NCBI GenBank assembly: GCA_964247055.1
Contig: OZ176050.1
Location: 10,726,001 to 10,790,000, forward strand
Reading direction: 5' to 3'
DNA from: Paragordius varius
Lineage: Eukaryota > Animalia > Nematomorpha
Length of the DNA: 64,000 nucleotides
The notes below the pieces were generated by a model that was not told the origin of the DNA, did no database searches, and was given only the letters and a program-made list of their open reading frames with translations. The translations under genes and the position numbers were made by a program. Shown piece after piece: positions 29,801 through 50,297 of this stretch. The number at the start of each line of letters is the position of its first letter. Position 1 is the stretch's first letter.

Positions 29801-32690
29801 CCTGACCGAAATGATTACGTTTGATTTTGGCATTCCCAACTTGATAAAACATGAAAATCTGGAAGCAATTTACCAAGCTCTCGATCGACATGTAACAAAT
29901 ACTATAATAGATTTGGAGATTATGACTAGTACAAAACTTTTTTAATATTTCAAACATATTTTTAATATTAGTTTTTTGTCATATATATTGGCTTTTTCTA
30001 TTATATTTGACAGAAGATGGTCAAGTGTATATTAATAATGATGACGATGATCCGTATTGTAAAAAATGGCATATAAGGTATCTTTTCGGAATATTTATCT
30101 AATTTTTTGAACATTATTAACGATAAATAAAACCATTCCCAATTCATATTATAAATTTAGATTGAAATTATTTACACTTCTTGGCACCTTTGGACGGTAT
30201 CAACAATCATACGCTAAACGCAATTTGTCAAATTTGCTAAAAGTTATGAAACTTTGTACTAATTTAGCCTTAACTGAACAAATCAAATATGAAGAACGGA
30301 CCTTTGAACCAAATAAATCAATCTGTTATGATGAATGCAATTTGATGTACTATATCCATGCCCTGAGAAATAATATAATACTGGATCTTTTGGAATATGT
30401 TAAGAGGTATATTGTTTTACCATGTATGATATAATTTTTTATAAATATATTTAAAGAATAAGGAAAGGGTATCAGAAAAGAGTACATGATTAATATTTAG
30501 AGAAGTGATAATAATCTTTAAAATGTAAAAAAAATGTGATAAAAATTTCTATAACCTTTGACATTTATGCAATTTTATTTTACCGTTTTGTAATTGAAAA
30601 AATAGGCTTATTACCAATTTTAATTTCTTTCCGATCGCGTATATAGTTTCCTGCTTTTTATATTTTTTACTTATCATTTTACTCGCACCTATTTAGGTAT
30701 CCAAGTTTAACGGACCCCTACATTCCATCGATCATTGAAAATGTAATGGTAACACAATTTTTACCTAACCAGCCTATCCCCTCTAACACCAACAATAGTT
30801 GCCAATTGTTTCAAATCGCACAATATCAAACCTTAACTACTTTCATGATTGATGTAATAGATCAGGGTTATGTGCCAATTACACGTTCTGGTATTTTGCT
30901 TTCTTTCATACCATTTTTGACTTTGGTGGACACCCAAGAATCCTCTTCACATATAAATGATTTATGGATAACTATGAATTTACGTATAAAATGTATGTTT
31001 GATAATTTGAACATTTTATCGGGAAAATCAAGTTATAATGCTGGGTATTTCTTTACCACACATTTCATGGATACAATATTGCTTTTACACGGTCTTATCA
31101 AACCTTTCAAAAACTTGAACATTGTATCTCAGTCTGAGAGGGAGTCCACAACTATAGTTTCGGAAAATAGTAATGGTAATTTATTTTAGAATAAATTTAA
31201 GATTTTATACTACATATAAATTTCGTTAATCATATTCTTTCCAATTATTTTTTTATTTTTTTCATTTCCTTTTTTGTTAAGAAACTTTTGAGCTACCACA
31301 CGAAATGGAAAATAATTATGGCAATACTCGAAATTTGGAAAAACTTTTTCTGCACGTGGGGATTCCTTCTCGGAACAAATTGCATCCCAAGGATCATTTT
31401 TATGACGACTCCCAATTATACACAAAAAAGTAATTTTCATTTTAATTTAAATTAAACAGAATTTCTCATAAATTTTTACTAAATCAAAACATATATTATT
31501 TGACGCTTTACGCACTTATAGACAACGCTTTGCAGTATATTTATATGGGTGGAAATATTTGAAAGTTCAACAGAAACTTTTGGTTGCCTTTAACTTGTGC
31601 ACTGGGCTTTTGATTCCGATCCTTGAAATTTTACCACAAAAATGTCGTCCAAATATAATCAAAGTATTTTACTGTTATAACATTATTTGGCCCTTTAAAT
31701 TATACTTAAGTCTTTATTTCATTAATATAATGGTTTTATATATATATCATTTATATTGATAAAATAAGGATATGGAGGAAATCAATCAAATAAAAATTAT
31801 GATCTCGATGCTCAATGATATTCTCGCTATTTTAAATTTTCGCGATGTATTGGCCCTTTTTCAAGAAATTAGAGGAATGCCTAATACTAAAGACAACACA
31901 ACTCCAAAAATTAAAAAACGTGCCCCAAAAAGTACACATATTTATACTATCTGAAACATTTAAAATAATACCATTTACAACCGCAAATTCACCCTTGAAC
32001 ATTTCCAATTCACCCTTGAACAATTTAAATCAACATGTCAAATTTACCCTAAAAATAAATTATTTTCCGTACTTATATAGCTCATGATTAATATGAAATA
32101 TTTCTTTATATTATAATTTATTATTTTTTTCAGTAACATGTTAAATTTAACCGAAATTTGATTTTTTTATTAATTGTAAAAAAATATATATCCAGTTTTT
32201 AATATTTAAAACACATAAATTATTTTATGGTGAATTTGAATTCTTCAAGGGTGTATTTGTCCAGGGGTCAATTTGAGGATAAATGGTATATTGCAAATTA
32301 TTATAATTAACAAAATAATTATATAGGGACAACACCAAAACGTATCAAAGGAGGGAGTTTGTCCAAAATTCAACAAAAACAATTAATCACGTCGCATTCA
32401 ATAGAAGGGAATCTATCAGGGATGGAAATAATCGATGCTGGAACTGATCAATCTTCGGAAAATGAAACAAAAATTCAACGAGTAAATATTTTTGTTTTAA
32501 CATATTTTTGAAAAATTATTTTAATATTTGTTAAAAACAATAGATTTATAAGGATCTCAAAGATGTGCTTTTACCTGCTTTACTGGATCTCAATAATTGG
32601 CGCCGAAAGTGGAAAAAACAACATGGATCATGGATAAAAATTGATTCTATCCAAATTTTAACTCTTATAGATATAGTGTCTGATGAATAG
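20840..32690 (+). CDS. NCAPD3: Condensin-2 complex subunit D3 (HEAT-repeat), highly divergent, multi-exon; 5' end uncertain
   Basis: Collinear matches to remembered CAP-D3 segments: SYSSIWTRVF (SMEESIWTFF), LVRRQCINTLTNLV (VRKQALQSLTELL), WLNLFRLAFATYCKEK (YLNKAFHIWSKKEK), SAWFMVTILF (PAWMLLSKIA), ALRNNIILDLLEYVKRY (AVRNNVIIVMCDLCIRY), FFTTHFMDTILLLH (MFFQHFIECIFHFN). Last exons 32327-32481 and 32553-32690 are phase-consistent with the donor at 31932. Confidence 0.8.
31969..32290. mobile_element. MITE family A inside an NCAPD3 intron; contains the left duplication breakpoint
   Basis: TACCATTTACA...AAATGGTATA termini. Confidence 0.8.
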
Positions 32691-33062
32691 TATTTTTGTT
32701 ATAACATATATAGAAAAAATATCGTGCAATATATAATTTTATTTTAGATTTTTGTAAAAAAATATATTTAGTTTACTTAATAAATATTTATGAATATGAA
32801 ATTTAACTTTTTTTACTAACGAAAATGAGTATACTATGATGTATCTTTATTATATTGACTTTTATCATGCGTAACTTATATACTTCAACGTAAATAGTTT
32901 ATATAATTTGGTATTCAATAGACAAAATCTTTTAATTTATAAAACATATTATTATTCGATACATAAATAAGGCATATTATAATGGGTGGAATCGTTTGGT
33001 AAATGGATTAATATTAATTTAGTAACAAACACATATAATGGGATAATAAAGAATCTATTAAT

Positions 33063-36000
33063 TTAAAACAAATTAATCCAAGGGTACGATTTCGGACATT
33101 TGTTAAAACAGATAACCGGGTGACGTTCTTCAGTCCAAGTTGTTTTGCTTATTTTGTAGCGACACTTTTTAGGCTTAGGGCATGCAGATTTTTCATTCCG
33201 TTCTCTCAGATGGTTACACTTAAAGGGCTCAAAATCATTAAGTTTTATATGTGGAACACCACCTTGCTTCATCCAATCCAATACCTGAGATATGGTAATT
33301 ATCCAAACATTATCAAATGACAGGGCATAATCCAAGAATTTTGCGAACCCTACATAATAGTTTTATTTAAAAAAAATAAGTAAATACATTGAAACATCAA
33401 CATTTTTTAAGTAAAGGCTACTTAACCCTAAAATATTTTTAAACCATTTTTGTTTACCTCGTAAGAAAATTCGGTTTATTAGTCCAGCATTAGATCATTT
33501 ATATTTTATCCAATTTAATCAAAAAACATAGGCATTTGTCAAGTAGTAACATTATTTGTCGAATACAAACGATATACATTTGAAAATAAGGGAAACGCCT
33601 TAACTTATCATCACGATAATTCATTGTACATATTTTATTTTATTTTTGTATTGATTATGTTAAATTCATAGATCTAATTTCGCTAAGATATGGGAATGAA
33701 ACAAATATATAAACATATTTTACAATAAAGGAACCATTTATATAAAAATATCCAATTCATATTATGATCTACTAGATCTTTTGCAATCAATGAGGTTAAT
33801 CCAAGGCCAAAAATTTTCTGTCAAAAACAAAAATATTGTTCGTGAGGTTCTCGATGGTTTGTCGGACGGTTCTTAGTGACAACATCAATAATTTATATAG
33901 GAATATTTTTCACTATTAAATTTAACTTCCATAAAATTAAACCCAAAAACAGTTAATATTTGTTTTAGAAAAAAATAAATAATAAAAATTATCATTCACC
34001 TTTAACCGTATGTTTAGCTTGAAAGTAAGAAGAGTGGAAAAATAGGGGAAGCGGTGCCTTGTTAGAATAGTAGTGTCGCTCGAAATTGAACTTCATGTCT
34101 TCATATACGGCTTTGATAGTTTTGGGTTGGGGACATCCATCCACCATAGCACACGTGTGAAATTTGGGTTCTGTGCTTTCAAGCGTGGCAGATTTGTATT
34201 GGAATAAGTCATCGTTGTTTATACCTTTTTGAATAAATTTTAATAACACATTTTTAACAATTTATGTGGCTTATGGCATAGTTTTGATACTACACATATT
34301 ACCCATCTTAAAGTTTACAAAGAAAGTATTCCATGCAAAAATAATTTTGAGAGTTTAAAACTCTTTTAAAAATGTCCGATGTTTCAATAATTTTTAATCG
34401 TTATGCGAAGTGATTTAAAAAAAATAAAAATTCATTTTTTTATACTTTGTGGCGTTGATTTTTTATTTGCATCATAGGAAAGTGGAGTGAAATCCTGTAA
34501 TTCGTCATCGTAGCTTCTGTAGGTTTTTTCGGTCATCTCCATATCCAAACTTTCTTTGCTATAAATTAATAAAAGGATGAGTTTAAGTTAAATATTTAAT
34601 GATAAATACATTATGGCATGATCGGTATCAATAATAACCGCGATCAAAAATTTGTAACCTTTATATACCATATCGTAACAAACGCCTATACAAATAAAAA
34701 ATAAAATTATCAAAAATAATGTCCATTTTTTGAAATTCAAAAATTTAATTAATTCAAAGGTATGAGCTAAATTTTTATTATATTACAATATAATGTATGT
34801 TAGGATATTAATTTGACGATCTTAAATTTCTCCATAAGTGGTCGAACTAGGGATTATCTTTAATCAGTAGCCACTGTAGCTAAATTATGTGAAATAAAAC
34901 GGTGATCAAAGAGAGAGAACAATTTGTATGGATTTGAACTGGAAATTTTTGTGTCTCTGGTTCCGGTTCGACATATTACTTTGAGAAAAACGGTTTATAA
35001 ACATAATTCTAGTTTAGTATCTAAAGTTTTATTAATATGGTTCTGATTTCGTGTTAATAATTTGAAATTACTTTGATCATAACTAAGCAGAAAACCATAA
35101 TTTTCCCTAAAAAATAAAAAACTTTTATGTTTAAATAGAAAAACAATATTAAATAACAAGGTTAACATAATAATAAATTAATATTTTGGAACTGGTAGAA
35201 GCCGGAATTTCCATCTCTCATAAAGATTACAAAATTATTTTTGATTTGTAGGTTGCAAAACGGTTTTAACAAAAACTTAAAGCTTTAATTCTATGAAAAC
35301 GGTCTCATTTTTATTTCCTAATTTTACAAACCAATGCTAACACTACTTTTCATCTCCGCCTTCATCAGAATTTATAAGTTGACTCTTAATGTTTTTCAGG
35401 TCGGAATCCTCAGTTTCGTCCTTTTTCTTGCTGGGAATCAGAGATTGGAAATACAGGAGTGGAACCTCCCATACTCCTGGCATTGCCTTTGTCGGACACT
35501 TTTCAATCAAACAGCTAACATTCTTAGCATTATCAAGAGTAAATGGGAAAAATGGTGGATTATTATCTTGTAGGGCCCAGGACGAATCATAAGTAAAATT
35601 TTCTTTGCGCAACATTTCAAACATTGTATTACCACCTTTTAAATATGATAAAAGTAATAAGGTTTTTTAGACTATTTTATATGATTATCATAAAAAGAAT
35701 GGAAAATTTGTAGGTTATAATTATGTACATATAATACAGTATAAATGGTTTAACCTTATATCAGTAGTCATAAGGGTAAACAATTGGTATTGGTATCGAT
35801 AATTATTAGAGTATTAATTTTTTTAAGTAGGTCCAATATAAGTGGAAGTTCCAATAACTCACACTTTTATTAAAGTAATTTTTGTTGAAATAATCATGAT
35901 TTAAAAAACCGTTAAACGAATTCGTAACTTGGCAAATGTAAAAAAGCTAAAACCATAAAGCAATTTTTCATTAAAATACCACTAATGTTTTGTGAGAATA

Positions 36001-39000
36001 TTATAAAACACCATATTAGATATTCTATTCATTAAATCAAATAAATATATTAAAAGTTTAAATTATACGGACAAAACGTAAATATATAAAGACAAATATT
36101 TTTTTCTAAAAGCCAACCATACTTTTTAAATATATATTTTTTTAAATAGTTTTTTAGAAAAAAATATTTGTCTTTATATTTACGTTCGGTATAATTTTAA
36201 TTTTTACTGTATATCTTTGAAAAAACATCAATAATAAAATAGATGACCCATCCTCAAGTATGGTGCTCGCATTCCTTTAATATCTTGAATGGGGATATTG
36301 GCTAATTTGCTGATAATACGCCTTTGGCCCACCATTTCACGTCTCCATTCATCGTATGAAGCAGAATTCCAATATGATTCCGGAAATTTGTGACTAAAAA
36401 ATATAAAAACGGTATGAGATTCTCATATATATATTTTACACTTTCAATGGCTGGTGAAATCACTAAATGTTTGATAATATTATTTAGCTAAAATAAATAA
36501 TATTCATATTTTGGCAACACAAGGTAAGTGGTAAATATGTAAAAAAGTATTATTAAATTACTATTAAAGTATAGAATGAGTAAGTATACTGGAAAGTTAT
36601 TAAATATTGCCGAATATTTAGGACAATAAAGGGCAGTATTATTGGCTAATAAATAGTAAAAAGTCAAAAAAATAACTATAAGCCAATTGCCCTTTGTTGT
36701 ATTTGCTATTTGGCAATAATTAATAACTTTCTAGCAATGTATACTTACTAATACTCTATATTAATATTATCTTACGCACAAAAGTTTTTTGTTTTGAATA
36801 ATAATGTAAAAATAAATGGTCAAACCTAATAGAATGGGAACCAATCTCGTGTCCTAATCGATACAATCGATTAACTCTTGAATAATCTGTGTATTCGTGG
36901 GAAACAAAAAATGTCGCTCCTATGGGACATCCATTTGGGTTTTTGCGGAACGGTTGGAACAAATATGAATATATGCTGATTAATAAAAGAATTTAAATAT
37001 AATAAAAATAAAATTACAACCATGTTTTATCAATTTTGTGGGGCAACCTAAATATAAACCCAATATAAAGATACCTATCCCTCATAGTTTTGGAAATTAT
37101 GCTCAAACTATATATTTATAAATAAAAATCAGATTTAATGGTGTTACATTATAAAAGGAACAGATGCGATATCATAAAATATTTTACTGGCCAAAGTATC
37201 TTTGTGGTTAAATAATAAAATAAACATTTAATACAAATATCTGAAAATAAATGGTAACTTATCATAATCTTGTCGGCGTACGCTATCATCAAACGTTATC
37301 ATAATAAGTTGTGGCATTTCATCGGGTTTGACGCTGGGCGGAACATCACTCGAAGGACATCTGCAGTGCGGATGACTGCAGGTTTCGGTGTCACATCCAT
37401 CACCAACTGTGTAATATTTGATAATTCAAAAAATTAGTCGTAAAATAACTGAAAAATATTTAAAAAATAGTAAGTCAAAAGAAATATTTTCCAACCATTG
37501 TTTTCGGAACAATTGAGTTCATCTGAGAAATCTTTGCAATTGGCTAATCCATCACATAAAGCGTCAGTCGGGATGCATTCTCGGGTATCTGTGCAACGCC
37601 ATTCGTTAAAACGACACTTATCTTTGAAATTTCACGTACAAAAATTCATTATATTTTATTTTAAATTTAAATAATTGGGAGTATGGTTAAAGGCAAAGGA
37701 GCTAATTTAACCGTTAAATCATTTTTTAAAAGCAAACGTATTGAGCTTATAAAACAGTCCATTAAGCTGTTAACTAAGTAACGATTTGTTTAAGTCTGAA
37801 AAGTTTCATTTTAATTTTTTTCATATATATGCGTATTATGACCGCGATAACATGCCTAGTTGTCGCCCATTGTTTACACCATGATTGCACATATCAAATT
37901 ATATTTTAGTTTAATTTCCAAAATTAGTTTGCGGTTAAGCAAAAATATTTTATAAATAACCTCCTTGGGTATATGTAACAGTTGTTGAAGTTACATTTTT
38001 AGATTCGGTAATAGTGTCAGAATGTATGGTTTCTTCAATTACTTCATTTATTGGAACTATATGCAAATATAATAATAAGAAATTATTTTTGAGAAACCCT
38101 TAATAAATAACATTGTGTGCAAAAAAATTAACAAAATATTTTTTTATATGAGATAGCTTATAACCAGGGAATTCATTTGCCGCAAAATTTTTATTTGTTG
38201 AAGACCTAATTTATAATGAGAGAAAATCAAAATTGGCCAAAAAGTGAAAATTAAGAATAATTAAGGCTTATTAAAAAAATTATGATAAAACTAGAGATAT
38301 GGTTTGTTATTATTTTATCAGATATTTACAATTTATAAATAGCCTAAAATTCTATAGTAGTTAATGTTTTATAAAACTCAATCAAAATCGCGTTTTTCTT
38401 TATACATACTTAAAAGACATAATTTTTTATGAAAATATTTTAATAACTAGCTAAACTCACTAAATAAAATTGATAAAATATTGTTTTTTATTTTTTCATA
38501 TTTTTGTCATTTGGTTTATTAGTACCAAATTAATTTTGGAAGGCTATGATTGAATAAAGAGTGGCTAAACTTTAGGTTATAATGTTAGTCATGCACGTGT
38601 TTCGTTAAAATTTCGTTAATATTTTTATGCTCATTTAAAATAAAATATCTATTAATTTAACCAGGGAGGTGCAAATTTAAGATTAGCAAATTCTTTAGAT
38701 CAATATTAGATGATTATATAATAACCGTCCGCAGAACTACAAGCGTGCTACTTTTTACACTATAATTACTGACATCACATATCCCATCAAGTAATTTTAA
38801 GGCAGTTATTTAAAAGTAACTTATATCAATAATTTGAGTGAATAATTAATATTTGATTTACCAGGTTCGACATTGCATTCCAATTCATCGGAGCCATCAG
38901 AACATTCAATGAGTCCATTACAACGGCCCTTGGCTGGGATACAGCCTTCAGTAGCACATTTGTATTCATCATCACGGCATTGTGTTTCATTGTATATGAG

Positions 39001-39017
39001 TTGTTTGAATTTATTCA
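33063..39017 (-). CDS. Headless chitin deacetylase cassette A (LDLa-linker-LDLa-CE4 catalytic domain), 10 intact exons
   Basis: Exons 38862-39017, 37961-38056, 37496-37621, 37259-37406, 36826-36975, 36248-36393, 35347-35635, 34446-34558, 34000-34224, 33063-33349. All are GT-AG and phase-consistent. Motifs TFDD, HSISH, RAPY, YDSS and PLFFH are intact. No signal peptide, CBM14 or first LDLa exon. Confidence 0.85.
36570..36760. mobile_element. Small inverted-repeat element in a deacetylase intron (second copy at ~43913-44103)
   Basis: AGTAAGTATACTGGAAAGTTATT vs AATAACTTTCTAGCAATGTATACTTACT; present in both duplication units. Confidence 0.45.
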
Positions 39018-39419
39018 CTACAATAAAATATGCTTTTATCTTTATCAAAAATCTTGGATAGAGTCCTAAATTTTAGCCTGACGAAACATATATAGCTCAT
39101 CGCTAATATATTAAAATATGAATTGTATATATTTTAAGTTAACAGTAAAAATTGAAATTAAAAAAATAAAGTGGAAGAGTATAAAGAAAAAAAGACCGCT
39201 AAGCTTTTCTAAACTTGATTTTTTAAACATAACTGATTTCTCTAAACTGCAAAGTATGAAATAGCGATGTAAATCGGCAACACAATCATTAATATATTTT
39301 ACAAATTGTAATTAAATAATTTATATAGGAAAAATTAAGATTCAAAAAAGTGTGGATATTCTTAGAAAAAAAAGTTGTCGTTTTTACATTTTGTGTGTAT
39401 AATTTCAATTTTTACTGTC

Positions 39420-39689
39420 AACAATTCAAATCAACATTTCAAATTTACCCTAAAAATAAATTATTTTCCGTACTTATATAACTCATGATTAATATGAAAT
39501 ATTTCTTTATGGCATAGTTTATTATTTTTTTAAGTATTATTTAATACGAAATTTGATTTTTTTGTTAAATGTAAAAAATATATATCCAGTTTTAAATATT
39601 TAAAAACATATAATTTATTTTAGGGTTTTTGAATTCTTCAAGGGTGAATTTAAATTGTTCAGCGGTCAATTTGAGGTGTAAATGGTATA
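39420..39689. mobile_element. MITE family A, left-truncated by the duplication junction
   Basis: Right TIR TGTAAATGGTATA present; left TIR replaced by deacetylase intron sequence. Confidence 0.8.
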
Positions 39690-39725
39690 TTGCAAATTCA
39701 TATTATTAACAAAATAATTATATAG

Positions 39726-40115
39726 GGACAACACCAAAACGTATCAAAGGAGGGAGTTTGTCGAAAATTCAACAAAAACAATTAATCTCTTCGCATTCAA
39801 TAGAAGGGAATCTATCAGGGATGGAAATAATCGATGCTGGAACTGATCAATCTTCGGAAAATGAAACAAAAATTCAACGAGTAATATTTTTTTTTGAAAA
39901 TTATTTAAGTAAATTTTATAATTTTATTATTAAATTTAAGGTGGTTTATTTTTGTAAAAAAACAATAGATTTATAAGGATCTCAAAGATGTGCTTTTACC
40001 TGCTTTACTGGATCTCAATAATTGGCGCCGAAAGTGGAAAAAACAACATGGATCATGGATAAAAATTGATTCTATCCAAATTTTAACTCTTATAGATATA
40101 TTGTCTGATGAATAA
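39726..40115 (+). CDS. NCAPD3: Duplicated orphan NCAPD3 terminal exons (39726-39880, 39978-40115), intact
   Basis: Same lengths (155 and 138 nt) and splice sites as 32327-32481 and 32553-32690; two amino-acid changes (T>S, V>L); stop TAA instead of TAG. Confidence 0.6.
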
Positions 40116-40489
40116 TAGTTTTTTGTTATAACATATATAGAAAAAATATCGTGCAATATAAAATTTTATTTTAGATTTTTTGTAAAAAAATGTATTTAGT
40201 TTACTTAATAAATATTTATGAATATGAAATTTAACTTTTTTTACTAACGAAAATGAGTATACTATGATATCTCTTTATTATATTGACTTTTATCATGCGT
40301 AACTTATATACTTCAACGTAAATAGTTTATATAATTTGGTATTCAATAGACAAAATCTTTTAATTTATAAAACATATTATTATTCGATACATAAATAAGG
40401 CATAAAATAATAATAGGTGGAATCGTTTGGTAAATGGATAAGTATTAATTTAGTAACACATATAATGGGATAATAAAGAATATATTAAT

Positions 40490-43400
40490 TTAAAACAAAT
40501 TAATCCAAGGGTACGATTTCGGACATTTGTTAAAACAGATAACCGGGTGACGTTCTTCAGTCCAAGTTGTTTTACTTATTTTGTAGCGACATTTTTTAGG
40601 CTTAGGGCATGCAGATTTTTCATTCCGTTCTCTCAGATGGTTACATTTAAAGGGCTCAAAATCATGAAGTTTTATATGTGGAACACCACCTTGTTTCATC
40701 CAATCCAAGACCTGAGATATGGTAATTATCCAAACATTATCGAATGACAGGGCATAATCCAAGAATTTTGCGAACCCTACATAATAGTTTTATTGAAAAA
40801 AAATAAGTAAATACATTGAAACATCAACATTTTTTAAGTAAAGGTTACTTAACCCTAAAATATTTTTAAACCATTTTCGTTTACCTCGTAAGAAAATTCG
40901 GTTTATTAGTTCAGCATTAGATCATTTATATTTTATCCAATTTAATTAAAAAACATAGGCATTTGTCAAGTAGTAACATTATTTGTCGAATACAAACGAT
41001 ATACATTTGAAAATAAGGGAGACGCCTTAACTTATCATCACGATAATTCATTGTACATATTTTATTTTATTTTTGTATTGATTATGTTAAATTCATAGAT
41101 CTAATTCCGCTAAGATATGGGAGTGAAACAAATATATAAACATATTTTACAATAAAGGAACCATTTATATAAAAATATCCAATTCATATTATGATCTACT
41201 AGATCTTTTGCAATCAATGAGGTTAATCCAAGGCCAAAAATTTTCTGTCAAAAACAAAAATATTGTTCGTGAGGTTTTCGATGGTTTGTCGGACGGTTCT
41301 TAGTGACAACATTAAATTAAATAATATTTTTCACCATTTTAACTTCTATAAAATTAAACCCAAAAACTGTCAGTATTTGTTTTAAACAAAATAATAAATA
41401 ATAAAAATTTTCATTTACCTTTAACCGTATGTTTAGCTTGAAAGTAAGAAGAATGGAAAAATAAGGGAAGCGGTGCCTTGTTAGAATAGTAGTGTCGCTC
41501 GAAATTGAACTTCATGTCTTCATATACAGCTTTGATAGTTTTGGGTTGGGGACATCCATCCACCATAGCACACGTATGAAATTTGGGTTCTGTGCTTTCA
41601 AGCGTGGCAGATTTGTATTGGAATAAGTCATCATTGTTAACACCTTTTTGAATAAATTTTTGGTAAAGTTTACAAAGAACGTTAATGTATTCCATGCAAA
41701 AATAATTTTGATAGTTTAAAACTCTTTTAAAAATGTCCGATGTTTCAATAATTTTAAATCGTTATGCGGAATGATTTAAAAAAATTGAAAATTTATTTTT
41801 TATACTTTGTGCTGTTGATTTTTTATTAGCATCATAGGAAAGTGGAGTGAAATCCTGTAATTCGTCATCGTAGCTTCTATAAGTTTTTTCGGTCATATCT
41901 ATATCCAAACTTTCTTTGCTATAAATTAATAAAAGGATGAGTCCAAGAAATTTAATAAATGCATTATGTCGTGAGCGGTATTAATAATAACCGTAATAAA
42001 TTTGTAACCTATATATAACATATCATAACAAACGCCTATACAAATAAAAAATAAAATTATTAAAAAAATGCCCAATTTTTGATGTATGAGCTAAATTTTT
42101 ATTTTGTTACAATATAATGTATGTTAGGATATTAATTTGACGATCTTAAATTTCTCCATAAGTGGTCGAACTAGTGATTATCTTTAATCAGTGGCCACTG
42201 TAACTAAATTATGTTGAAATAAAAAAGAAGGTTATCAAAGAGAGAGAGAACAATTTGTATGGATTTGAACTGGAAACTTTTGTGTCTCTGGTTCGGGTTT
42301 CACATATTTGAGAAAAACGGTTTATAGATATAATTCTAGTTTAGTATCTAAAGTTTTTTACATATGGTTCTGATTTCGGTTTGTTAATAAATTTGAAATT
42401 ACTTTGATTAAAACTAAGCAGAAATCTATCGTATTCTAATTTGCTCTGAAAATAAAAAGCTTTTATGTTTAAATAGAAAAACAATATTAAATTACAAGGT
42501 TAACATAATAATGAATGAATATTTTTTGGAACTGTTGGACACTGCAATTTCGTCTTTCATATAGATTTCAAAATCATTGTAGATTTGTAGGTTTCAAAAC
42601 GGTTGTAAAAAAATTAAAGCTTAGGTTATATGAAAACGGTCTCATTTCCTAATTTTATCAAACACCATTGAACAAACCAATGCGAACACTACTTTTCATC
42701 TCCGCCTTCATCAGAATTTATAAGTTGACTCTTTATGTTTTTCAGGTCGGAATCCTCAGATTCGTCCTTTTTCTTGCTTGGAATCAGAGATTGGAAATAG
42801 AGGAGTGGAACCTCCCATACTCCTGGCATAGCCTTTGTCGGACACTTTTCGATCAAACAGCTAACATTCTTAGCATTATCCAGAGTAAATGGGAAAAATG
42901 GTGGATTATTGTCTTGTAGGGCCCAGGAGGAATCATAAGTAAAATTTTCTTTGCGCAACATTTCAAACATTGTATTACCACCTTTTAAATATGATAAAAG
43001 TAATAAGGTTTTTTTTTAAACTATTTTATATGAATATCATAAAAAGAATGGAAAATTTATAGGTTGCAATTATGACACATATTAAAATATAAATGGTTTA
43101 TAATTATATCAGTAGTCTTAAGGGTATAAACAATTGGTATAATATCGATAATTATTAGAATATTATTTTTTTAAGTAGGTCCAATATCCAATAATACATA
43201 CTTTTATTAAACAATTAATTTTTGTTGAATAAATATAATCATTATTTCAAAAACTTAACACGAATTTGTAACCTGGCAAGTAAGGAAAGCAAATTTTTTA
43301 AACATAGCAATATTTCATTACCATTAATATTTGTGATAATATTATGAAACACCATATTAGATTTTCTATTCATTATATCAAATAATACAGTAAAAGTTTA

Positions 43401-46400
43401 AATTATACGGACAAAACGTAAAAATATAAAGACAAATATTTTTTTTCTAAAAGCCAACCATACTTTTTAAATAATATTTTTTTAAATAGTTTTTTTGAAA
43501 AAAATATTCTTTATATTTACGTTCGGTGTAATTTCATTTTTTACTGTATATCTTTGATAAAACATCAATATTAAAATAGACGACCCATCCTCAAGTATGG
43601 TGCTCGCATTCCTTTAATATCTTGTATAGGGATATTGGCTAATTTGCTGATAATACGCCTTTGGCCCACCATTTCACGTCTCCATTCATCGTATGAAGCA
43701 GAATTCCAATACGATTCCGGAAATTTGTGACTAAAAATATAAAAAAAACAGTGAATATGAGATTTTCATATATATATTTTACACTTTCAATGGCTGGTAA
43801 TATCACTAAATGTTTGATAATATTATTTAGCTAAAATAAAAAAATATTCCTATTTTGGCAACACAAGGTAAGTGGTAAATATATAAAAAAGTACTATTAA
43901 ATTACTATTAAAGTACAGGAGTAAGTATACTGGAAAGTTATTAATTATTGCCGAATAGTTAGGACAACAAAGGGCAGTATTATTGGCTAATAAATAGTAA
44001 AAAGTGAAAAAAATAACTAGAAGCCAATCATACTGCCCTTTGTTGTATTTGCTATTTGGCAATAATTAACCTCCTAGCAATGTATACTTACTAATACTGT
44101 ATATTAATATTATCTTAAAAATAAAACTTTTTTGTGAATAATAATATAAAAATAAATGGTTAAACCTAATAGAATGGGAACCAATCTCGTGTCCTAATCG
44201 ATACAATCGATTAACTCGTGAATAATCTGTGTATTCATGGGAAACAAAAAATGTAGCACCTATAGGGCATCCATTTGGGTTTTTGCGGAACGGTTGGAAC
44301 AAATATGAATATATGCTGTTGACAAAAAATTAAAAAATGTAATAAAAATAAAATTTTTACATCCATGTTTTATTAATTTTGTGAGGGAACCTAACAATAC
44401 ACCTACTATTTGATACCTACGTTTTCCTTCATAGTTTTGGCAATTATACTCAACCAACTATATATTTATAAATAAAAATCAAATGTATTACATTATAAAA
44501 GAAACAGATGCGATATCATAAAATATATTACTGGCCAAAGTATCTTTGTGGTTAAATAATAAAATAAACATTTAATACAAATAACTGAAAATAAATTGTA
44601 ACTTATCATAATCTTGTCGTCGTACGCTATCATCAAACGTTATCATAATGAGTTGTGGCATTTCATCGGGTTTGACGCTGGGCGGAACATCACTCGAAGG
44701 ACATCTGCAGTGCGGATGACTACATGTTTCAGTATCACATCCATCACCGACTGTGTGATATTTGATAATTCAAAAAATTAGTCGTAAAATAATTGAAAAA
44801 TCTTTAAAATAATAAGTCAAAAGAAATATTTTCCAACCATTGTTTTCGGAACAATTGAGTTCATCTGAGAAATCTTTGCAATTGGCTAATCCATCACATA
44901 AAGCGTCAGTCGGGATGCATTCTCGGGTATCTGTGCAACGCCATTCGTTAAAACGACACTTATCTTTGAAATTTCATATGCAAAAATTCATTATATTTTA
45001 TTTGGAATTTAAAATAGTTGGGAGTATGGTTTAAGGCAAAGGAGCTAATTTAACCGTTAAATCGTTTTTTAAAAGCAAACGTATTGAGCTTATAAAACAG
45101 TCCATTAAGCTGTTAATTAAGTATCGATTTGTTTAAGTCTGAAAAGTTTCATTTTAATTTTTTTCATATATATGCGTATTATGACCGCCATAACATGCCT
45201 AGTTGTCGCCCATTGTTTACACCATAATTGCACATATCAAATTATATTTTAGTTTAATTTCCAAAATTAGTTTGCGGTTAAGCAAAAATATTTTATAAAT
45301 AACCTCCTTGAGTATATATAACAGTTGTTGAAGTTACATTTTTAGATTCGGTAATAGTGTCAGAATATATGGTTTCTTCAATCACTTCATTTATTGGAAC
45401 TATATGCAAATATAATCATAAGAAATTATTTTTAAAAAACCCTTAATAAATAACATTGTGTGCAAAAAAATTAACAAAATAATTTTTTTCATGAGATAGC
45501 TTATAACCAAGGAATTCATTTGCCGCAAAATTTTTATTTGTTGAAGACCTAATTTTTAAAATATTGAGAGAAAATCAAAATTGGCCAAAAAGTGAAAATT
45601 AAGAATAATTAAGGCTTATTAAAAAATATATAAAACTAGAGATATGGTTTATTATTATTTTATCAGATATTTACAATTTATAAATAGCCTAAAATTCTAT
45701 AGTTAATGTTTTATAAAACTCAGATCAAAATCGCGTTTTTCTTTATACATACTTAAAAGACATAATTTTTTATGAAACTATTTTAATTATTAACTAGCTA
45801 AACTCACTATTAAAATTTTAACCTTCATATTTTATACAGTAACAATAAATTATATATCAAATAGAATTGATAAAATATTGTTTTTTATTTTTTCATATTT
45901 TTGTCATTTGGTTTATTAGAACCAAATTAATTTCGGAAGGCTGTTATGATGTTAGTCATGCACGTGTTTTGTTAAAATTTCGTTTATATTTTTATGCTCA
46001 TTTTAAATAAAATATCTATTAATTTAACCAGGGAGGTGCAAATTTAAGATTAGCAAATTCTTTATATCAATATTAAATAATTATAGAATAGTTGTCCGCA
46101 GAACTACAAGCGTGTTACTTTTTACACTTTAATTACTGACATCATGCATCCCATCAAGTAATTTTAAAGCATTTATATAAAAGTAACTTATATCAATAAT
46201 TTGAGTGAATAATTAATGTTTGATTTACCAGGTTCGACATTGCATTCCAATTCATCGGAGCCATCAGAACATTCAATGAGTCCATTACAACGGCCCTTGG
46301 CTGGGATACAGCCTTCAGTAGCACATTTGTATTCATCATCACGGCATTGTGTTTCATTGTATATGAGTTGTTTGAATTTATTTACTACAATAAAATATGC

Positions 46401-49400
46401 TTTTAGTTTTTTTCTTTACCAAAAATCTTGGATAGTTTCCTAAATTTTAGCTTGACAAAACCAATATAACTCATCGCTAATATACTAAAACAGTGATACT
46501 CAAACCGCGGCCCGCGGGCCGCATGCGGCCCTAAGAGTGCTTTAAAATTGCCCTATGACCATATTGATACTTATAACTTTTAACACATAAACGTATTTTC
46601 GATTTTAATATTAATTTATTTTCTTAGATTTAATTTTGGTAGTTTTTATTTTTTACCCAATTCGAAATGTAAAAAATTTCCCAACATTAAAATAATTTGA
46701 AAATTTTGGCACGCGTTGTTTCTGTTTCGTATTCTATTTCCTTTTCTATTTTGAAATTTTAATTGCATTCCTTTTTTGTATTTAAGCAAGCCTTTCACCC
46801 AAACTTGCATATACATATTCTTTTCACAGCTGTCCTGCCTCATTTTTTATAACTCATTCCCATAAAATATTTTTCAAATAAACATTAAATTTCAACTTGT
46901 TTTTTATAGCGTAAATCAAATTATATTCTTATTTTTTGAAAAAATTTACATAATATTTAAACATAATTTCAAAGGATGACATCTAATGCTAAAAAGCGTA
47001 AATTATCCGATGAAAATCGCCCTTAAAAAAGAATGGGAAGAAAAATTCTTTGTCCTTTAAAATAAAAATGTTGTAACTTGCCTTATATGTAAGGACAACA
47101 TAATTATAAAAAAATACAATATTGAAAGAATTTTACAATCCATTTTTCTCATAAATTACCAAAAAAATCATGAGGAAAAACGAAAAATTTAAAAAGATTA
47201 AGGAATTATACCAGAAAGGAAAATCTATTATGTCCATAGCTTTCTCCCAGGAAAATGTTGTATAATTAGCTTCGTATGAAATTTGTTATATGTGAAAAAA
47301 TATGAAACCGTTTACTGATTCACAACTAAAATGTCTAATGGTTGCACTTTTTTTGATAAATTCCATATAAAGATAAATCATGAGGCAAATTAAAAAACTT
47401 CAACTTTCTGCAACATGTGCTCGACACATTGAAGATATGTCTAATTATATTTTTAACAATACATTATTGGCTCTGAAAAACTGCAAATATTTTAGTAATG
47501 CTATTGATTCTAGCACTGATATTAGTACAACACCTCAATGTGCGCTCTTCGTAAGATTCTGCAACGACAACATAATCAACGATAAATATTTAAAATTTTT
47601 ACCAATGAATAATACCACGAAAGGAAGTCATTTTCTCGAAATAATAATTAACACTTTTTTCAATAAAAATGGTATATCTATGAAAAATTGGTTTCGATCT
47701 GCACAGATGGCTGTCCCTCTATGATTAGAATAACCAAAGGAATTATTCCTCTTTTGAAAAACAAATATAATTTACAAAATATTTCATCCTTTCACTGCTT
47801 TATTCATCAAACTTGGTTTCGCGTGTTAAAGATGAATCACTCAATTCAGTAATTAAAACAATTGTGGATATAGTTAACCACATCCGTGGAAGAGAATTCA
47901 ACCGCCGTAAATTCAAAAATCTTCTGAAAGATCTCCACAGTGAGTCTGATTATATTCTTATGTACACCGCTGTGATATGGCTAAGCCTTAGCAAAGTATT
48001 AAATAGAGTTTTAAGACATGAAATTCTATTATTTAGAAAAGATAACAGAAAGTTTGAGGAGGAAATTAATAGTGACACATGGTGGGTTTTATTAGCCTAC
48101 CTTTGCGAAACTACTTATAAACTTTTTTAATACGTCGTCAAAGAAGCAAAATAATAACCCTTGTTAATGAAATATCTTTTAAAAATTAATAATATAAACT
48201 AGATTTTATAAATTAAACACTCCTATATTTTCCAACACTTAAAACGATTCATGAAAAAAATATGGAATTTACCGCGGAGATTAATTTAATAATAATCTTA
48301 TATTTTTATCTAATGAGATATAATTCAGATTTTAAAAATTATATTAATAATTGCTTAAAACTCGTTTAAAATTAATGGCAAATGGATATATTTAATATTA
48401 AACAACTTGAGCATTTCGGTTTTGATCAGGCGCATATTATTGAAGACTTCGTATAAAAATTCCAATCTGGATATTCAAAGAGAATCGTAGAGGAGAAAGA
48501 TATGTAGATTGGCAAGATGTGCCAAATAAATATGAAAATAAAAAAATCTGCTCAAGTTATTCTAACTCATTTTCCCTCAACTTATACGTGCGAGACGTCA
48601 TATTCAAAAATAAAATATGTCAAGAATACATACAGAAACTGCTTAACCGATGATCATATGGACGACGTATTAAGATTGGCCTGTCATGAGGTAATCTCAA
48701 ATTTGTCAAATATTGGTTAATATCGAAATAAAAATTGTTATCAAAATATTTTAATTTTTTAAACTAAATGGTAAATCAGTTTTTAGCTGGATTTACATGC
48801 GATCCGCAAAAAATTCATTGTGCTGATTTAGAGTATAAATATGTGCATATGTGTTAAATAGCTATGGAATATTTGCCATTATAAGGTTCATGGCCCTCGA
48901 AAAAAAAATATATTTTATTTGGCCCGTCAAATTTTTTTGGTGAGTACCACTGTACTAAAATATGAATTGTATATATTTTAAGTAACAGTAAAAATTGAAA
49001 TTAAAAAATAAAGTGTAAAAATATATAGAATATTTTTATAAGCAAACCGCTAAACTTTTCTAAAGATTTGTTATAACTGATTGTGAACAAAATATGAAAT
49101 AGCTATGTAAATCGGTAACACAATCAATTTTATATTTTACAATCGTAATTAAACAATTTATATGGGAAAAATTAAGGTTAAAAAAGTTTGGATATCCTTT
49201 GAAAAAAATAGTCTTTTAGTTTTAACATATTGTGTGTATAATTTAAATTTTTACTGTATCTTACCATCTAACGTAGTGCAGTCTAATCTTTCATCCGATG
49301 CATCTTGGCAATCAATAATACCGTTGCAGATATCCTCAGGAAAAATGCAAGACTGTTTGTCATTACACAATATCGATTCCTCATAACATATCGCTAAATA

Positions 49401-50297
49401 TATAAATTTCTCAACAAACGATATTTTTTAATTAAAATCGAATATATTATATTATTGAATTTTAGCCAAAAAATTGTCTTTAATATTTTATTTTAAATCG
49501 AGGAATATTGCAATACTAAAAAGAGATCTTTTCTAACCATGATGTACCGTTTAATTTTCTCTACTACACTTTTGCACATGATTAAAATATATATAAATTG
49601 GATTGCGTCTTATAAAACTTCTTTTATGGTTATCATCTTCGATGACATAAACGCGAAACTTTTTGAAAACACTTTAAAAGTTTTTCTTTATCTTATATAA
49701 ATTTTTTACTTATTATTTTGTTTAACAATCCAAAAATCCACACCTTGCCGATGTTATATTTTAAAATATATATGGTGTTTTGCCCATTACAAATTATCCT
49801 AAAATCCAAAATTATATATATATGTCTTGGAAAAGTCAAAGTGTTTACTGGATTTAGGTGAATAACAAATTGCAGTAAGATTGGTCACATCAGATTTCGG
49901 AATACAGCGTTGAGAAGCATGGTTGTATATGTGATCCTTCAAACAATTTAGCATTAAAATTGTGTTGTTGAGACAATACCCAAACTTTTGGCAATTATGT
50001 ACGTTGGCGTACCGCTTATCTTGAACGCATTCAAACCCATCCTTAGGTTTCAATTGGTATATGCCTTATATTTGGAATTTTAAATTTAACTACTAATTAT
50101 TTTACGTATCGTTCAATACCATATTGGCATAAGTATTAAATATGATTAATTAAAAAAGTTTCATTACAAATATTTTATAGCCGACAAAGTATAAATTTCC
50201 AATTAAATAACCAAAAATAATGAAAAAAATAATAGATAAAATTTTAGGCTTAAAAAACTTTTGCTTTATTATAATTTAATTTATCAAATTATACCAT
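40490..50297 (-). CDS. Secreted chitin deacetylase (CE4), signal peptide-CBM14-LDLa-LDLa-Thr-rich linker-LDLa-catalytic domain, ~711 aa
   Basis: CBM14 exon 49849-50064 (six-Cys pattern CVQD..CQKFGYC..C..C..C), LDLa exons 49265-49393, 46229-46384 and 44838-44963, catalytic exons from 44603-44750 ([11 protein letters not shown]) to 40490. Signature [19 protein letters not shown]; motifs [36 protein letters not shown]. The 5' exons (ATG 50295-50297; 50212-50263, [16 protein letters not shown]) are tentative. Confidence 0.9.
46491..48952 (+). mobile_element. hAT (Charlie/SPIN/GTF2IRD2-like) transposon, 2462 bp, disrupted transposase from ATG 46976
   Basis: TIRs CAGTGATACTCA / TGAGTACCACTG; perfect 8-bp TSD TACTAAAA. 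Motifs AIDSSTD, CTDG (frameshifted), FHCFIHQ, WLS and the hATC segment [15 protein letters not shown]. An empty site is present in unit A at ~39107-39116. Confidence 0.95.

What the first reader, a model, noticed from the sequence alone, without database searches (positions are those of the whole stretch)
33063..39017. Headless chitin deacetylase cassette under strong purifying selection
Cassette A lacks a promoter-proximal exon, signal peptide, CBM14 and LDLa1, yet all 10 exons, splice sites and catalytic motifs are intact. A manual comparison with cassette B gives about 40 synonymous differences and 8 amino-acid changes, 7 of them in the linker or acidic insert. Examples: TFDD exon 7 synonymous/0 replacement, NPNG exon 6/0, HSISH exon 3/0. 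Its first acceptor completes a Val codon with the LDLa1 phase-1 donor (GTG vs GTA in B). A copy dead since duplication should carry many replacements. It is therefore probably expressed via the shared 5' exons, by long-range cis- or trans-splicing or from an internal start.
Basis: partly seen in the sequence, partly recalled or inferred. Interest (0 to 1): 0.85.

Follow-up and report, generated by a model that had tools for sequence, protein, structure and literature searches.

The report
Duplicated chitin deacetylase gene tail
The last ten exons of a horsehair-worm chitin deacetylase gene lie twice in a row and differ almost only at silent positions. Equally different silent variants occur in other individuals, so this more likely reflects two gene versions (haplotypes) side by side than a proven second, working gene end.

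Summary
A minus-strand chitin deacetylase gene (CBM14, three LDLa, NodB domain; closest relative in the horsehair worm Gordionus) has its last 10 exons in two tandem units: A (32019-39418) and B (39420-46490, continuing to 49257 past a hAT-like insertion).

- **Exons:** all 10 pairs have equal length and keep AG/GT.
- **Differences:** 51 in 1736 coding bases, as 42 silent and 8 replaced codons; dN/dS is about 0.045.
- **Indels:** none in exons, against 60 events in about 4 kb of introns.
- **A long-dead A is excluded** (P below 1e-11).

No RNA run holds the stretch, and the four runs laid look like DNA.

Those runs show exon versions that are neither A nor B yet are as different, and again silent (14:1). 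Non-coding divergence varies from 1.3% to 13% along the unit. The spare 3' exons of the convergent plus-strand gene are also intact.

The scan has noted this same stretch (s1-368126) and similar 'spare but clean' copies elsewhere in this genome.

My odds:
- about 0.55 that the differences are allelic (stacked haplotypes, or a young duplication built from two haplotypes);
- about 0.22 that A is a working alternative 3' block.

The parts
49849..50064 (-). Shared CBM14 (chitin-binding) exon, present once, upstream of both cassettes
   Evidence: tblastn with P0001; Pfam CBM_14 E 2.5e-7; borders ag|GC...CCA|gt
49265..49393 (-). Shared LDLa1 exon with a phase-1 donor (…GATG|gtaaga), present once
   Evidence: tblastn; Pfam Ldl_recept_a E 1.6e-5; borders checked
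48986..49256 (.). MITE R1, copy at the upstream end of unit B, 8 nt from the LDLa1 donor
   Evidence: Terminal inverted repeats CAGTAAAAAT / ATTTTTACTG; 82% identical to the copy at 39143-39417
46491..48952 (.). hAT-like transposon inserted in the first intron of unit B only
   Evidence: 8-bp target-site duplication TTTTAGTA on both sides and CAGTG ends; weak Dimer_Tnp_hAT match, E 0.003; 81-85% inverted relative at 18318-20569
39420..46490 (-). Tandem unit B: 10 exons (46384-46229 … 40776-40490), 3' flank and truncated MITE R2. It continues to 49257 once the hAT-like insertion is removed.
39143..39417 (.). MITE R1 copy lying exactly at the A/B junction. Its end (39417, plus T at 39418) abuts the inside of R2 at 39420 with at most one filler base.
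   Evidence: Many contigs of all runs end at 39416-39418, and depth there is about 1000 times the single dose, so this is the end of a high-copy element.
32019..39418 (-). Tandem unit A (the finding): 10 exons, introns, 3' flank
38862..39017 (-). A exon 1 (LDLa2); its acceptor accepts the phase-1 donor of LDLa1
   Evidence: Pfam Ldl_recept_a E 6.8e-11; 1 difference from B
37961..38056 (-). A exon 2 (linker)
   Evidence: 4 differences from B, 2 of them replacements
37496..37621 (-). A exon 3 (LDLa3)
   Evidence: Pfam Ldl_recept_a E 1.7e-10; 0 differences from B
37259..37406 (-). A exon 4 (start of the deacetylase domain, TFDD motif)
   Evidence: 7 silent differences
36826..36975 (-). A exon 5 (NPNG … GHEIGSHSI)
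   Evidence: weak Polysacc_deac_1 match; 6 silent differences
36248..36393 (-). A exon 6 (SHKFPESYW … MRAPYLRM)
   Evidence: 3 silent differences
35347..35635 (-). A exon 7 (core of the domain and start of the acidic insert)
   Evidence: 9 differences, 1 replacement
34446..34558 (-). A exon 8 (insert)
   Evidence: 7 differences, 3 replaced codons
34000..34224 (-). A exon 9 ([10 protein letters not shown] …)
   Evidence: 7 differences in 6 codons, 1 of them replaced (I410V)
33063..33349 (-). A exon 10 with the stop codon
   Evidence: 7 differences, 1 replacement
31954..32259 (.). Fold-back MITE R2, full copy at the downstream end of unit A. The duplication breakpoint (32019) lies about 65 nt inside it. 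The copy at 39420-39689 lacks that left end.
32327..32690 (+). Last two exons of the convergent plus-strand gene (32327-32481 and 32544-32690, stop TAG), inside unit A
   Evidence: ag/gt borders and open joined frame
39726..40115 (+). Spare copy of those two plus-strand exons inside unit B (39726-39880 and 39969-40115, stop TAA), still open
   Evidence: 5 differences in 302 nt and no indel, while the 63-nt intron between them has 13 mismatches and 3 indels

Best explanation
Cassettes A and B are two allelic-grade versions of one and the same working 3' gene block. Most of their 51 coding differences arose while each version was 'the' gene on a different haplotype. That history filters out replacements and frameshifts, but it says nothing about what A does in its present place.

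The two versions lie in tandem for one of two reasons. Either a recent rearrangement at transposon ends joined, or later exchanged sequence between, two divergent haplotypes. Or the assembler stacked the two haplotypes of one locus. I cannot tell which. The clean junction favours a real rearrangement slightly, about 55:45.

Shown here:
- the tandem anatomy;
- the intact exons and the silent-site bias;
- third versions of the exons in other samples;
- the uneven neutral divergence along the unit.

Inferred:
- that the A-B differences predate the juxtaposition;
- that A therefore need not be spliced to the shared CBM14 and LDLa1 exons.
For: (1) Third versions exist. In sample S3 (runs X4, X5) the exon 7 contig carries, within 52 nt and phased by 31-letter words, a version that differs from B at 4 sites and from A at 5, all silent. 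Exon 1, where A and B differ once, differs from both at 5 silent sites. Exon 9 carries 5 further private changes.

(2) Over all exons laid, the variants that are neither A nor B are 14 silent to 1 replacement. This is the same ratio as A against B, 43:8 (Fisher p 0.67). Silent divergence of this depth therefore exists among versions that are not the two assembled cassettes.

(3) Contigs of S1 and S2 mix A and B letters at sites closer than 31 nt, for example 35565 A-type with 35583 B-type, and 36878 B-type with 36897 A-type. Exchange between the types is therefore ongoing or old.

(4) Both S3 versions of exon 7 are closer to B than to A, so there is no A-with-A, B-with-B pairing as an old fixed duplication would give.

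(5) Non-coding divergence runs from 1.3% to 13% along the unit (chi-square across introns p 9e-8). This is what segments with different coalescence times give, not one duplication date.

(6) The spare copy of the convergent gene's last two exons is also open and clean: 5 differences in 302 nt and no indel. Under the use-based reading this needs a second, independent alternative-end story.

(7) Scan notes for the same genome, not checked by me, list many spare exon copies with the same silent bias. They include truncated exon-edge copies that cannot be exons.

(8) A and B encode proteins that are 98.6% identical, with 7 of the 8 changes in the linker or insert. No diversification is visible that would explain keeping two ends.
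Against: - A-type intron contigs with zero differences occur in two other samples (S1 about 1.1 kb, S2 about 1.2 kb), and both also carry B letters. This fits fixed paralogues more easily than three independent A/B heterozygotes.
- The junction is base-precise: a transposon end against the inside of another transposon, with no N, no duplicated flank and no homology. This is not the usual look of stacked haplotigs.
- A transposon-end rearrangement would more naturally involve sister chromatids. The units would then be identical at birth, and all divergence and constraint would postdate the duplication.
- The related species Gordionus montsenyensis has only 0.55% heterozygosity (bioRxiv 10.1101/2023.06.26.546503).
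- S3 could be a cryptic sister lineage rather than the same population.
- The low divergence of the spare plus-strand exons is close to that of the neighbouring non-coding DNA (2.4%), so point 6 above is weak.
- Contigs from word graphs can drop or mix variants that lie more than 31 nt apart.
Confidence: 0.55

Rival explanations
1. The duplication is real and old (silent divergence about 0.12), and both blocks are kept by selection because both are used. Transcripts from the single promoter carry the signal peptide, CBM14 and LDLa1 exons. They then splice either to B, or, after reading through B's end, over about 10 kb to the identical acceptor of A. Trans-splicing is a variant of this reading.
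For: - dN/dS is about 0.045, there are no exon indels, and all 20 splice sites are kept.
- A dead A is excluded at P below 1e-11.
- The acceptor of A exon 1 is identical to B's over 15 nt and fits the phase-1 donor of LDLa1.
- A has no signal peptide and no in-frame Met before codon 157, so it can only work with the shared exons.
- The junction anatomy looks like a real rearrangement.
- A-type and B-type sequence are both present in S1 and S2.
- A is not the more decayed copy: it is GC-richer at the differing exon sites, 28:13.
Against: - There is no RNA evidence at all.
- Third versions, equally divergent and equally silent, exist in other samples, so the silent bias does not need post-duplication selection.
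- Variants show no orthologue-like pairing.
- Neutral divergence is uneven along the unit.
- The two proteins are 98.6% identical, so nothing is gained by choosing between them.
- Reading through B's 3' end is required.
- The same pattern in the convergent gene's spare exons, and at other loci of this genome, would need many parallel stories.
Confidence: 0.22
2. A is a dead spare that stays clean only because gene conversion from the working copy B keeps overwriting it.
For: Tandem units convert each other readily. Divergence is uneven, and exons 1 and 3 are almost identical between A and B. Contigs of other samples are mosaics of A and B letters.
Against: Conversion erases silent and replacement differences alike. 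The differences that remain would be dominated by A's own unfiltered mutations, roughly 3 replacements per silent change, together with indels. What is seen is 8:43 and no indel. Silent-site divergence (0.11-0.14) is not lower than intron divergence (0.07), so exons are not preferentially homogenised.
Confidence: 0.05
3. A is an independent gene with its own promoter and start, either upstream of exon 1 or from an internal Met.
For: About 1.5 kb of sequence, including a MITE, lies between B's stop codon and A exon 1. An in-frame Met at codon 157 precedes the TFDD motif.
Against: - No ATG-initiated exon with a signal peptide lies in 39018-40489. That stretch is simply the copy of the 3' flank of A.
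- A product starting at Met157 would lack the signal peptide and all LDLa modules of a secreted, cysteine-rich enzyme.
- The constraint covers the LDLa exons 1 and 3 as well, with 1 and 0 differences.
Confidence: 0.03

Closest known systems
Group I/II-type animal chitin deacetylases (CBM14 + LDLa + CE4/NodB domain), such as insect CDA1/serpentine and CDA2/vermiform. Nearest sequences: two Gordionus sp. proteins (CAK9297011.1 = P0001, and P0151).
   Same: The domain order is CBM14, LDLa, deacetylase domain, with TFDD, H-x-x-x-H and RAPY motifs. The two Gordionus proteins share the unusual three LDLa modules and the long insert, at 57% identity over the cassette.
   Different: Here only the 3' ten exons are doubled. 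In Gordionus the two paralogues are complete genes 4.6 Mb apart, and neither is doubled within 10 kb. From my own knowledge, Drosophila serp and verm are neighbouring complete genes and Tribolium CDA2 swaps a single exon; neither claim was checked here.
False (haplotypic) duplications in genome assemblies. From my own knowledge these are described for vertebrate assemblies by Ko et al. 2022, Genome Biology; the paper was not read here.
   Same: There are two adjacent copies of one segment. They differ by allelic-type variation with a low replacement/silent ratio, and every functional element is intact in both.
   Different: No gap or contig border lies at the junction (no N in the window). No flank is duplicated, and the join is base-precise at a transposon end. 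Read depth relative to the flanks could not be measured.
Genes with alternative 3' exon blocks joined to common 5' exons. From my own knowledge, Drosophila lola and mod(mdg4) are examples, some isoforms by trans-splicing.
   Same: One set of 5' exons is followed by two complete, phase-compatible 3' blocks, each with its own stop codon.
   Different: In those genes the alternative ends encode different domains and their use is documented by transcripts. Here the ends are 98.6% identical and no transcript is known.
Tandem duplications made by aberrant transposition of hAT elements. From my own knowledge, maize Ac/Ds reversed-ends or sister-chromatid transposition is the described case.
   Same: A transposon end lies exactly at the joint between the two units, and a second copy of the element lies at the outer border.
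   Different: No target-site duplication could be recognised. R1 is a short non-autonomous element of uncertain superfamily. The mechanism is inferred from anatomy only.

Membership tests
Animal chitin deacetylase (CE4/NodB with CBM14 and LDLa) | Chitin-binding peritrophin-A (CBM14) domain | tested here: met
   Pfam CBM_14 E 2.5e-7 on the exon at 50064-49849. It is present once and shared, not in cassette A.
Animal chitin deacetylase (CE4/NodB with CBM14 and LDLa) | LDL-receptor class A module(s) | tested here: met
   There are three modules: the shared LDLa1 (E 1.6e-5), and exon 1 (E 6.8e-11) and exon 3 (E 1.7e-10) of each cassette.
Animal chitin deacetylase (CE4/NodB with CBM14 and LDLa) | NodB-homology deacetylase domain with metal and catalytic motifs (TFDD, H-S/T-x-x-H, R-x-P-Y) | tested here: met
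   [14 protein letters not shown] and MRAPYL are present and identical in A and B. The region aligns along its whole length to P0001, which carries PF01522. Single exons give only a weak Pfam match, E 0.0019. The joined model was not sent to Pfam.
Animal chitin deacetylase (CE4/NodB with CBM14 and LDLa) | N-terminal signal peptide | tested here: inconclusive
   The first exon was not located with confidence upstream of 50064. Cassette A itself has none.
Gene with alternative 3' exon blocks on common 5' exons | Transcripts joining the common donor to the first exon of each block | not testable with these tools
   No RNA run holds the stretch. The laid runs show no exon-exon joints. No protein fragment of this gene is in the protein collection.
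Gene with alternative 3' exon blocks on common 5' exons | Phase-compatible acceptors, with a complete open frame and stop codon in each block | tested here: met
   The phase-1 donor of LDLa1 fits both first acceptors. Both blocks have 578 open codons and a stop.
Gene with alternative 3' exon blocks on common 5' exons | Blocks encode different products | tested here: not met
   The two products are 98.6% identical, and 7 of the 8 changes lie in the linker or insert.
False haplotypic duplication of an assembly | Each copy at about half the read depth of the unique flanks | tested here: inconclusive
   A-specific contigs lie at about 183 and shared exon contigs at about 320-420 in run X1, which is one dose against two. 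The 6-kb stretch I laid holds no unique flank, so one dose could be haploid or diploid.
False haplotypic duplication of an assembly | No read crosses the joint; a gap or contig end lies at the joint | tested here: inconclusive
   The window has no N. The joint lies between two elements of about 1000 or more copies, which 31-letter-word contigs cannot bridge.
False haplotypic duplication of an assembly | Differences look like standing allelic variation | tested here: met
   The silent/replacement ratio matches that of private variants in other samples. Third versions and mosaics exist, and divergence is uneven along the unit.

The most novel reading that the evidence does not exclude
The duplication is real and fixed, and the whole 10-exon block encoding two LDLa modules and the entire catalytic domain works as an alternative gene end. 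It would be reached by skipping all of B and its polyadenylation site over a 10-kb intron (or by trans-splicing). It would be interleaved with a likewise duplicated and used alternative end of the convergent plus-strand gene. If the similar cases noted elsewhere in this genome are of the same kind, horsehair worms would use tandem 3'-end duplication as a regular way of building genes.
Probability: 0.2. Interest if true: 0.7.

Novelty: new member of a known kind. Interest (0 to 1): 0.35.

Why it matters
If the ordinary reading holds, the value is a caution. In this very AT-rich horsehair-worm assembly a low dN/dS between neighbouring copies cannot be taken as proof that a spare copy is used, because versions of the gene differing at about 10% of silent sites are around. 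Gene counts and 'alternative end' calls in this genome need a read-depth check first.

If the use-based reading holds, this would be a rare case of a whole catalytic domain offered twice behind one promoter, and a handle on how splice and polyadenylation choice work over 10 kb in a little-studied phylum.

Either way the locus is a clean, small test case. About 50 diagnostic exon sites separate A from B, so one RT-PCR and one depth plot would decide.

Tried and rejected
- **RNA evidence.** The one run search found no holder on record as RNA. Five runs guessed to be RNA under the same species label hold next to none of the words. The two runs with word shares of 0.17-0.19 that I hoped were RNA (X4, X5) cover introns, and their contigs cross exon borders without any exon-exon joint, so I read them as DNA with uneven coverage, perhaps Hi-C.
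- **Protein fragments of spliced transcripts.** A search with exon 7 by reference found nothing in the 52-166 aa range. A search with P0001 found no protein of the window's species in the 405-1288 aa range.
- **Outgroup polarisation.** The two Gordionus proteins are only 57% identical. The replaced sites lie mostly in poorly alignable linker or insert, and no lineage could be assigned.
- **Depth as copy number.** The stretch I laid (33990-39989) lies entirely inside the repeat, so one dose cannot be calibrated. Exon depths are also inflated relative to AT-rich introns. With hindsight, a stretch including 31000-32018 would have been the better choice.
- **Crossing the joint.** This is impossible with short contigs, because both sides are high-copy MITEs.
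- **Conversion-only and own-start readings.** Both rejected on the numbers; see the rival explanations.
- **Naming the convergent plus-strand gene.** Pfam on ten ORFs and on the two last exons gave nothing usable, and one Atlas look-up gave scores below 0.9.
- **Joined model.** Following the operators' note, the joined 10-exon model was used only inside local scripts (dN/dS, and local alignment with P0001 and P0151). It was not sent to any search or folding tool, so that step is left out.

Full report
**What is there.** The window is very AT-rich (about 26% G+C) and has no N. Self-comparison shows a head-to-tail repeat: 32019-39116 against 39420-46490 at 90-94% identity, with 39109-39418 matching 48953-49257 at 82%.

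A search with the largest exon found a 736-aa protein of the horsehair worm Gordionus sp. m RMFG-2023 (P0001, CAK9297011.1) as the closest relative. Its locus has the same G+C content. Scan notes for this genome also call it a horsehair-worm genome.

tblastn with P0001 lays out one minus-strand gene:
- a CBM14 exon (50064-49849);
- an LDLa exon (49393-49265) that ends in a phase-1 donor;
- the same ten exons twice, as B (46384 … 40490) and A (39017 … 33063).

Pfam confirms CBM_14 and three Ldl_recept_a modules. The deacetylase motifs [14 protein letters not shown] and MRAPYL are present in both copies. The architecture (CBM14, three LDLa, insert-bearing NodB domain) is shared with two Gordionus paralogues. 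Those are complete genes 4.6 Mb apart and neither is doubled locally.

**Check of the observation.**
- *Exon structure.* All ten exon pairs have identical lengths, and all 20 acceptors and donors are AG and GT. The first acceptor of A completes a Val codon with the LDLa1 donor: GTG in A, GTA in B.
- *Coding differences.* There are 51 in 1736 nt, giving 42 silent codons and 8 replaced codons. Seven of the 8 lie in the linker or the insert. dN/dS is 0.043-0.069 by four methods, with dS 0.10-0.14.
- *Non-coding contrast.* Introns differ at 6.65% of aligned sites and carry 60 indel events in 4013 nt, while the exons carry none (P about 5e-12).
- *Dead-copy test.* If A had been free of selection since the split, 46-94 replacements would be expected on its branch alone, and 8 are seen on both branches together (P below 1e-11). 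A can have been neutral for at most about 19-32% of its branch.
- *What A lacks.* No CBM14 or LDLa1 copy precedes A. A has no in-frame Met before codon 157.

**Anatomy of the repeat.**
- The 2.46-kb block at 46491-48952 is a hAT-like transposon. It has an 8-bp target-site duplication (TTTTAGTA) and a weak match to the hAT dimerisation domain. With it removed, unit B runs on to 49257, eight bases from the LDLa1 donor.
- Each unit begins, in gene direction, with a 275-bp MITE, which I call R1 (39143-39417 and 48986-49256; ends CAGTAAAAAT / ATTTTTACTG).
- Each unit ends in a fold-back MITE, R2. The copy at 31954-32259 is complete. The copy at 39420-39689 lacks its left 50-65 nt.
- The joint is therefore the exact end of R1 set against the inside of R2, with at most one filler base, no homology and no duplicated flank.
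- The unit also contains the last two exons of a convergent plus-strand gene (32327-32481 and 32544-32690). Their spare copy (39726-39880 and 39969-40115) is still open. It shows 5 differences in 302 nt and no indel, while the 63-nt intron between the two exons has 13 mismatches and 3 indels. An earlier scan note on this same stretch had pointed to this.

**Public reads.**
- *Runs found.* No holder is on record as RNA. Five runs guessed to be RNA under the same species label hold next to none of the words.
- *What was laid.* I laid four runs on 33990-39989, within the 6000-letter limit. All four cover introns. Their contigs cross exon-intron borders, and no exon-exon joint is listed. I read them as DNA, so expression of A could not be tested.
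- *Doses in X1.* In run X1 (sample S1), four A-type intron contigs without a single difference lie at depth 182-187. Exon contigs lie at 317-416, which is one dose against two. The stretch laid holds no unique flank, so I cannot say whether one dose is a haplotype or a diploid locus.
- *The joint.* It lies between elements of about 1000 or more copies and cannot be bridged by short contigs.

**Variation in the other samples**.
- Sample S3 (X4, X5) carries two versions of exon 7. One is B-like. The other differs from B at 4 sites and from A at 5 within 52 nt, and is phased because the sites lie closer than the 31-letter words.
- Its exon 1 differs from both A and B at 5 sites, although A and B differ there only once. 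Its exon 9 has 5 further private changes.
- Of the 15 exon variants that are neither A nor B, 14 are silent. This ratio does not differ from A against B (Fisher p 0.67).
- Both S3 versions of exon 7 are nearer to B than to A, so the variants do not pair up A with A and B with B.
- S1 and S2 show combinations of A and B letters at sites closer than 31 nt (35565/35583 and 36878/36897) that are not in the assembly.
- Versions of this gene block as far apart as A and B, and equally silent, therefore exist outside the assembled pair, and they exchange segments.

**Further tests inside the window.**
- Non-exon divergence runs from 1.3% to 13% along the unit (chi-square across introns p 9e-8). It is low at both ends and high in the middle, which does not fit one duplication date without later exchange.
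- A is GC-richer than B at differing exon sites (28:13, p 0.03) but not in introns (99:89). A is therefore not the more decayed copy; I have no firm reading of this.

**Weighing the readings.** Two kinds of history give 8 replacements against 43 silent changes and no indel.

   - the joint looks like a real transposon-end rearrangement;
   - A-type and B-type sequence are both seen in S1 and S2;
   - A can only work with the shared 5' exons, whose donor it fits.

2. *An allelic origin of the differences.* The two units were working alleles on different haplotypes and now lie side by side, through a young rearrangement or later exchange with alleles, or through haplotype stacking by the assembler. 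In its favour:
   - the third versions and the mosaics;
   - the lack of orthologue-like pairing;
   - the uneven divergence;
   - the equally clean spare exons of the convergent gene;
   - the near identity of the two proteins (98.6%);
   - the many similar notes in this genome, which I did not check: PSMC2/XPC tails, LysRS exons, and truncated exon-edge copies that cannot be exons.

Gene conversion from B onto a dead A does not explain the data, because the remaining differences would then be dominated by A's unfiltered mutations. An independent start for A is not supported either.

I put the allelic origin at about 0.55. Within it, a real tandem arrangement is slightly more likely than stacking. 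I put the working alternative 3' block at about 0.22, and the remainder on the minor or unknown readings.

**Comparison with known cases.** As a protein this is an ordinary member of the animal CBM14-LDLa-NodB chitin deacetylases, of a horsehair-worm subtype with three LDLa modules. As a locus it resembles, on one side, haplotypic duplications of assemblies and young tandem segmental duplications at transposon ends. On the other side it resembles genes with alternative 3' exon blocks such as lola or mod(mdg4). It fails the feature that makes those genes meaningful, namely different products, and the defining feature (transcripts) could not be tested.

**Limits.** Contigs can drop variants and mix those more than 31 nt apart, so I relied on phased sites and on complete difference counts per contig. 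S3 may be a cryptic lineage. No more reads could be laid, so the depth-versus-flank test, which would be decisive, is left as the first next step.

Noticed in passing
window 32327-32690 (+) and 39726-40115 (+): The last two exons of an unidentified convergent plus-strand gene lie inside the repeat unit. Their spare copy is still open: 5 differences in 302 nt, and the stop codon is TAG in one copy and TAA in the other. The gene body (ORFs at 21-31 kb) gave no Pfam or Atlas identification.
   Followed up: partly
window 46491-48952: A hAT-like transposon lies in the first intron of unit B only. It has an 8-bp target-site duplication (TTTTAGTA), CAGTG ends and a weak hAT dimerisation-domain match. 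An 81-85% identical inverted relative lies at 18318-20569.
   Followed up: partly
window 35990-36189, 36590-36789, 37990-38589, 39190-39789: Intron and junction segments have word depths hundreds to thousands of times the single-copy dose in all four runs (up to about 7e5 against 183). These are very high-copy MITE-like elements. Several 'joints' between 36082-36186 and 39397 reflect copies of one such element.
   Followed up: no
window 34242-34325: A form lacking 84 nt just upstream of the exon 9 acceptor of A is present in all four runs at about one dose. It overlaps the 60-nt stretch (34242-34301) that A has and B lacks, so it looks like an indel polymorphism or the B-type form.
   Followed up: no
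cassette A against B, exons: At differing exon sites A holds G or C where B holds A or T 28 times, against 13 the other way (p 0.03). Introns are symmetric (99:89). A scan note elsewhere in this genome also mentions a GC-richer silent version of an exon copy.
   Followed up: partly
L001 10001-13608 and L002 10001-15825 (Gordionus chromosome OX940784.2): Gordionus has two complete paralogues of this gene, 79% identical and 4.6 Mb apart on one chromosome in opposite orientation. They have far fewer introns: codons 356-736 of P0001 align as one block in L001. The window's gene has ten exons over the same part.
   Followed up: partly
window 39143-39417 and 48986-49256: The two R1 MITE copies at colinear places of the two units are only 82% identical, much less than their flanks (91-95%). 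No target-site duplication can be recognised at either copy.
   Followed up: no
cassette B donors of exons 1, 2, 3, 6, 8, 9: All of these donors end in phase 1, like the LDLa1 donor. If B's end were read through, any of them could join A exon 1 in frame, which would predict a two-domain product. This is arithmetic on the exon phases only; there is no evidence for it.
   Followed up: no
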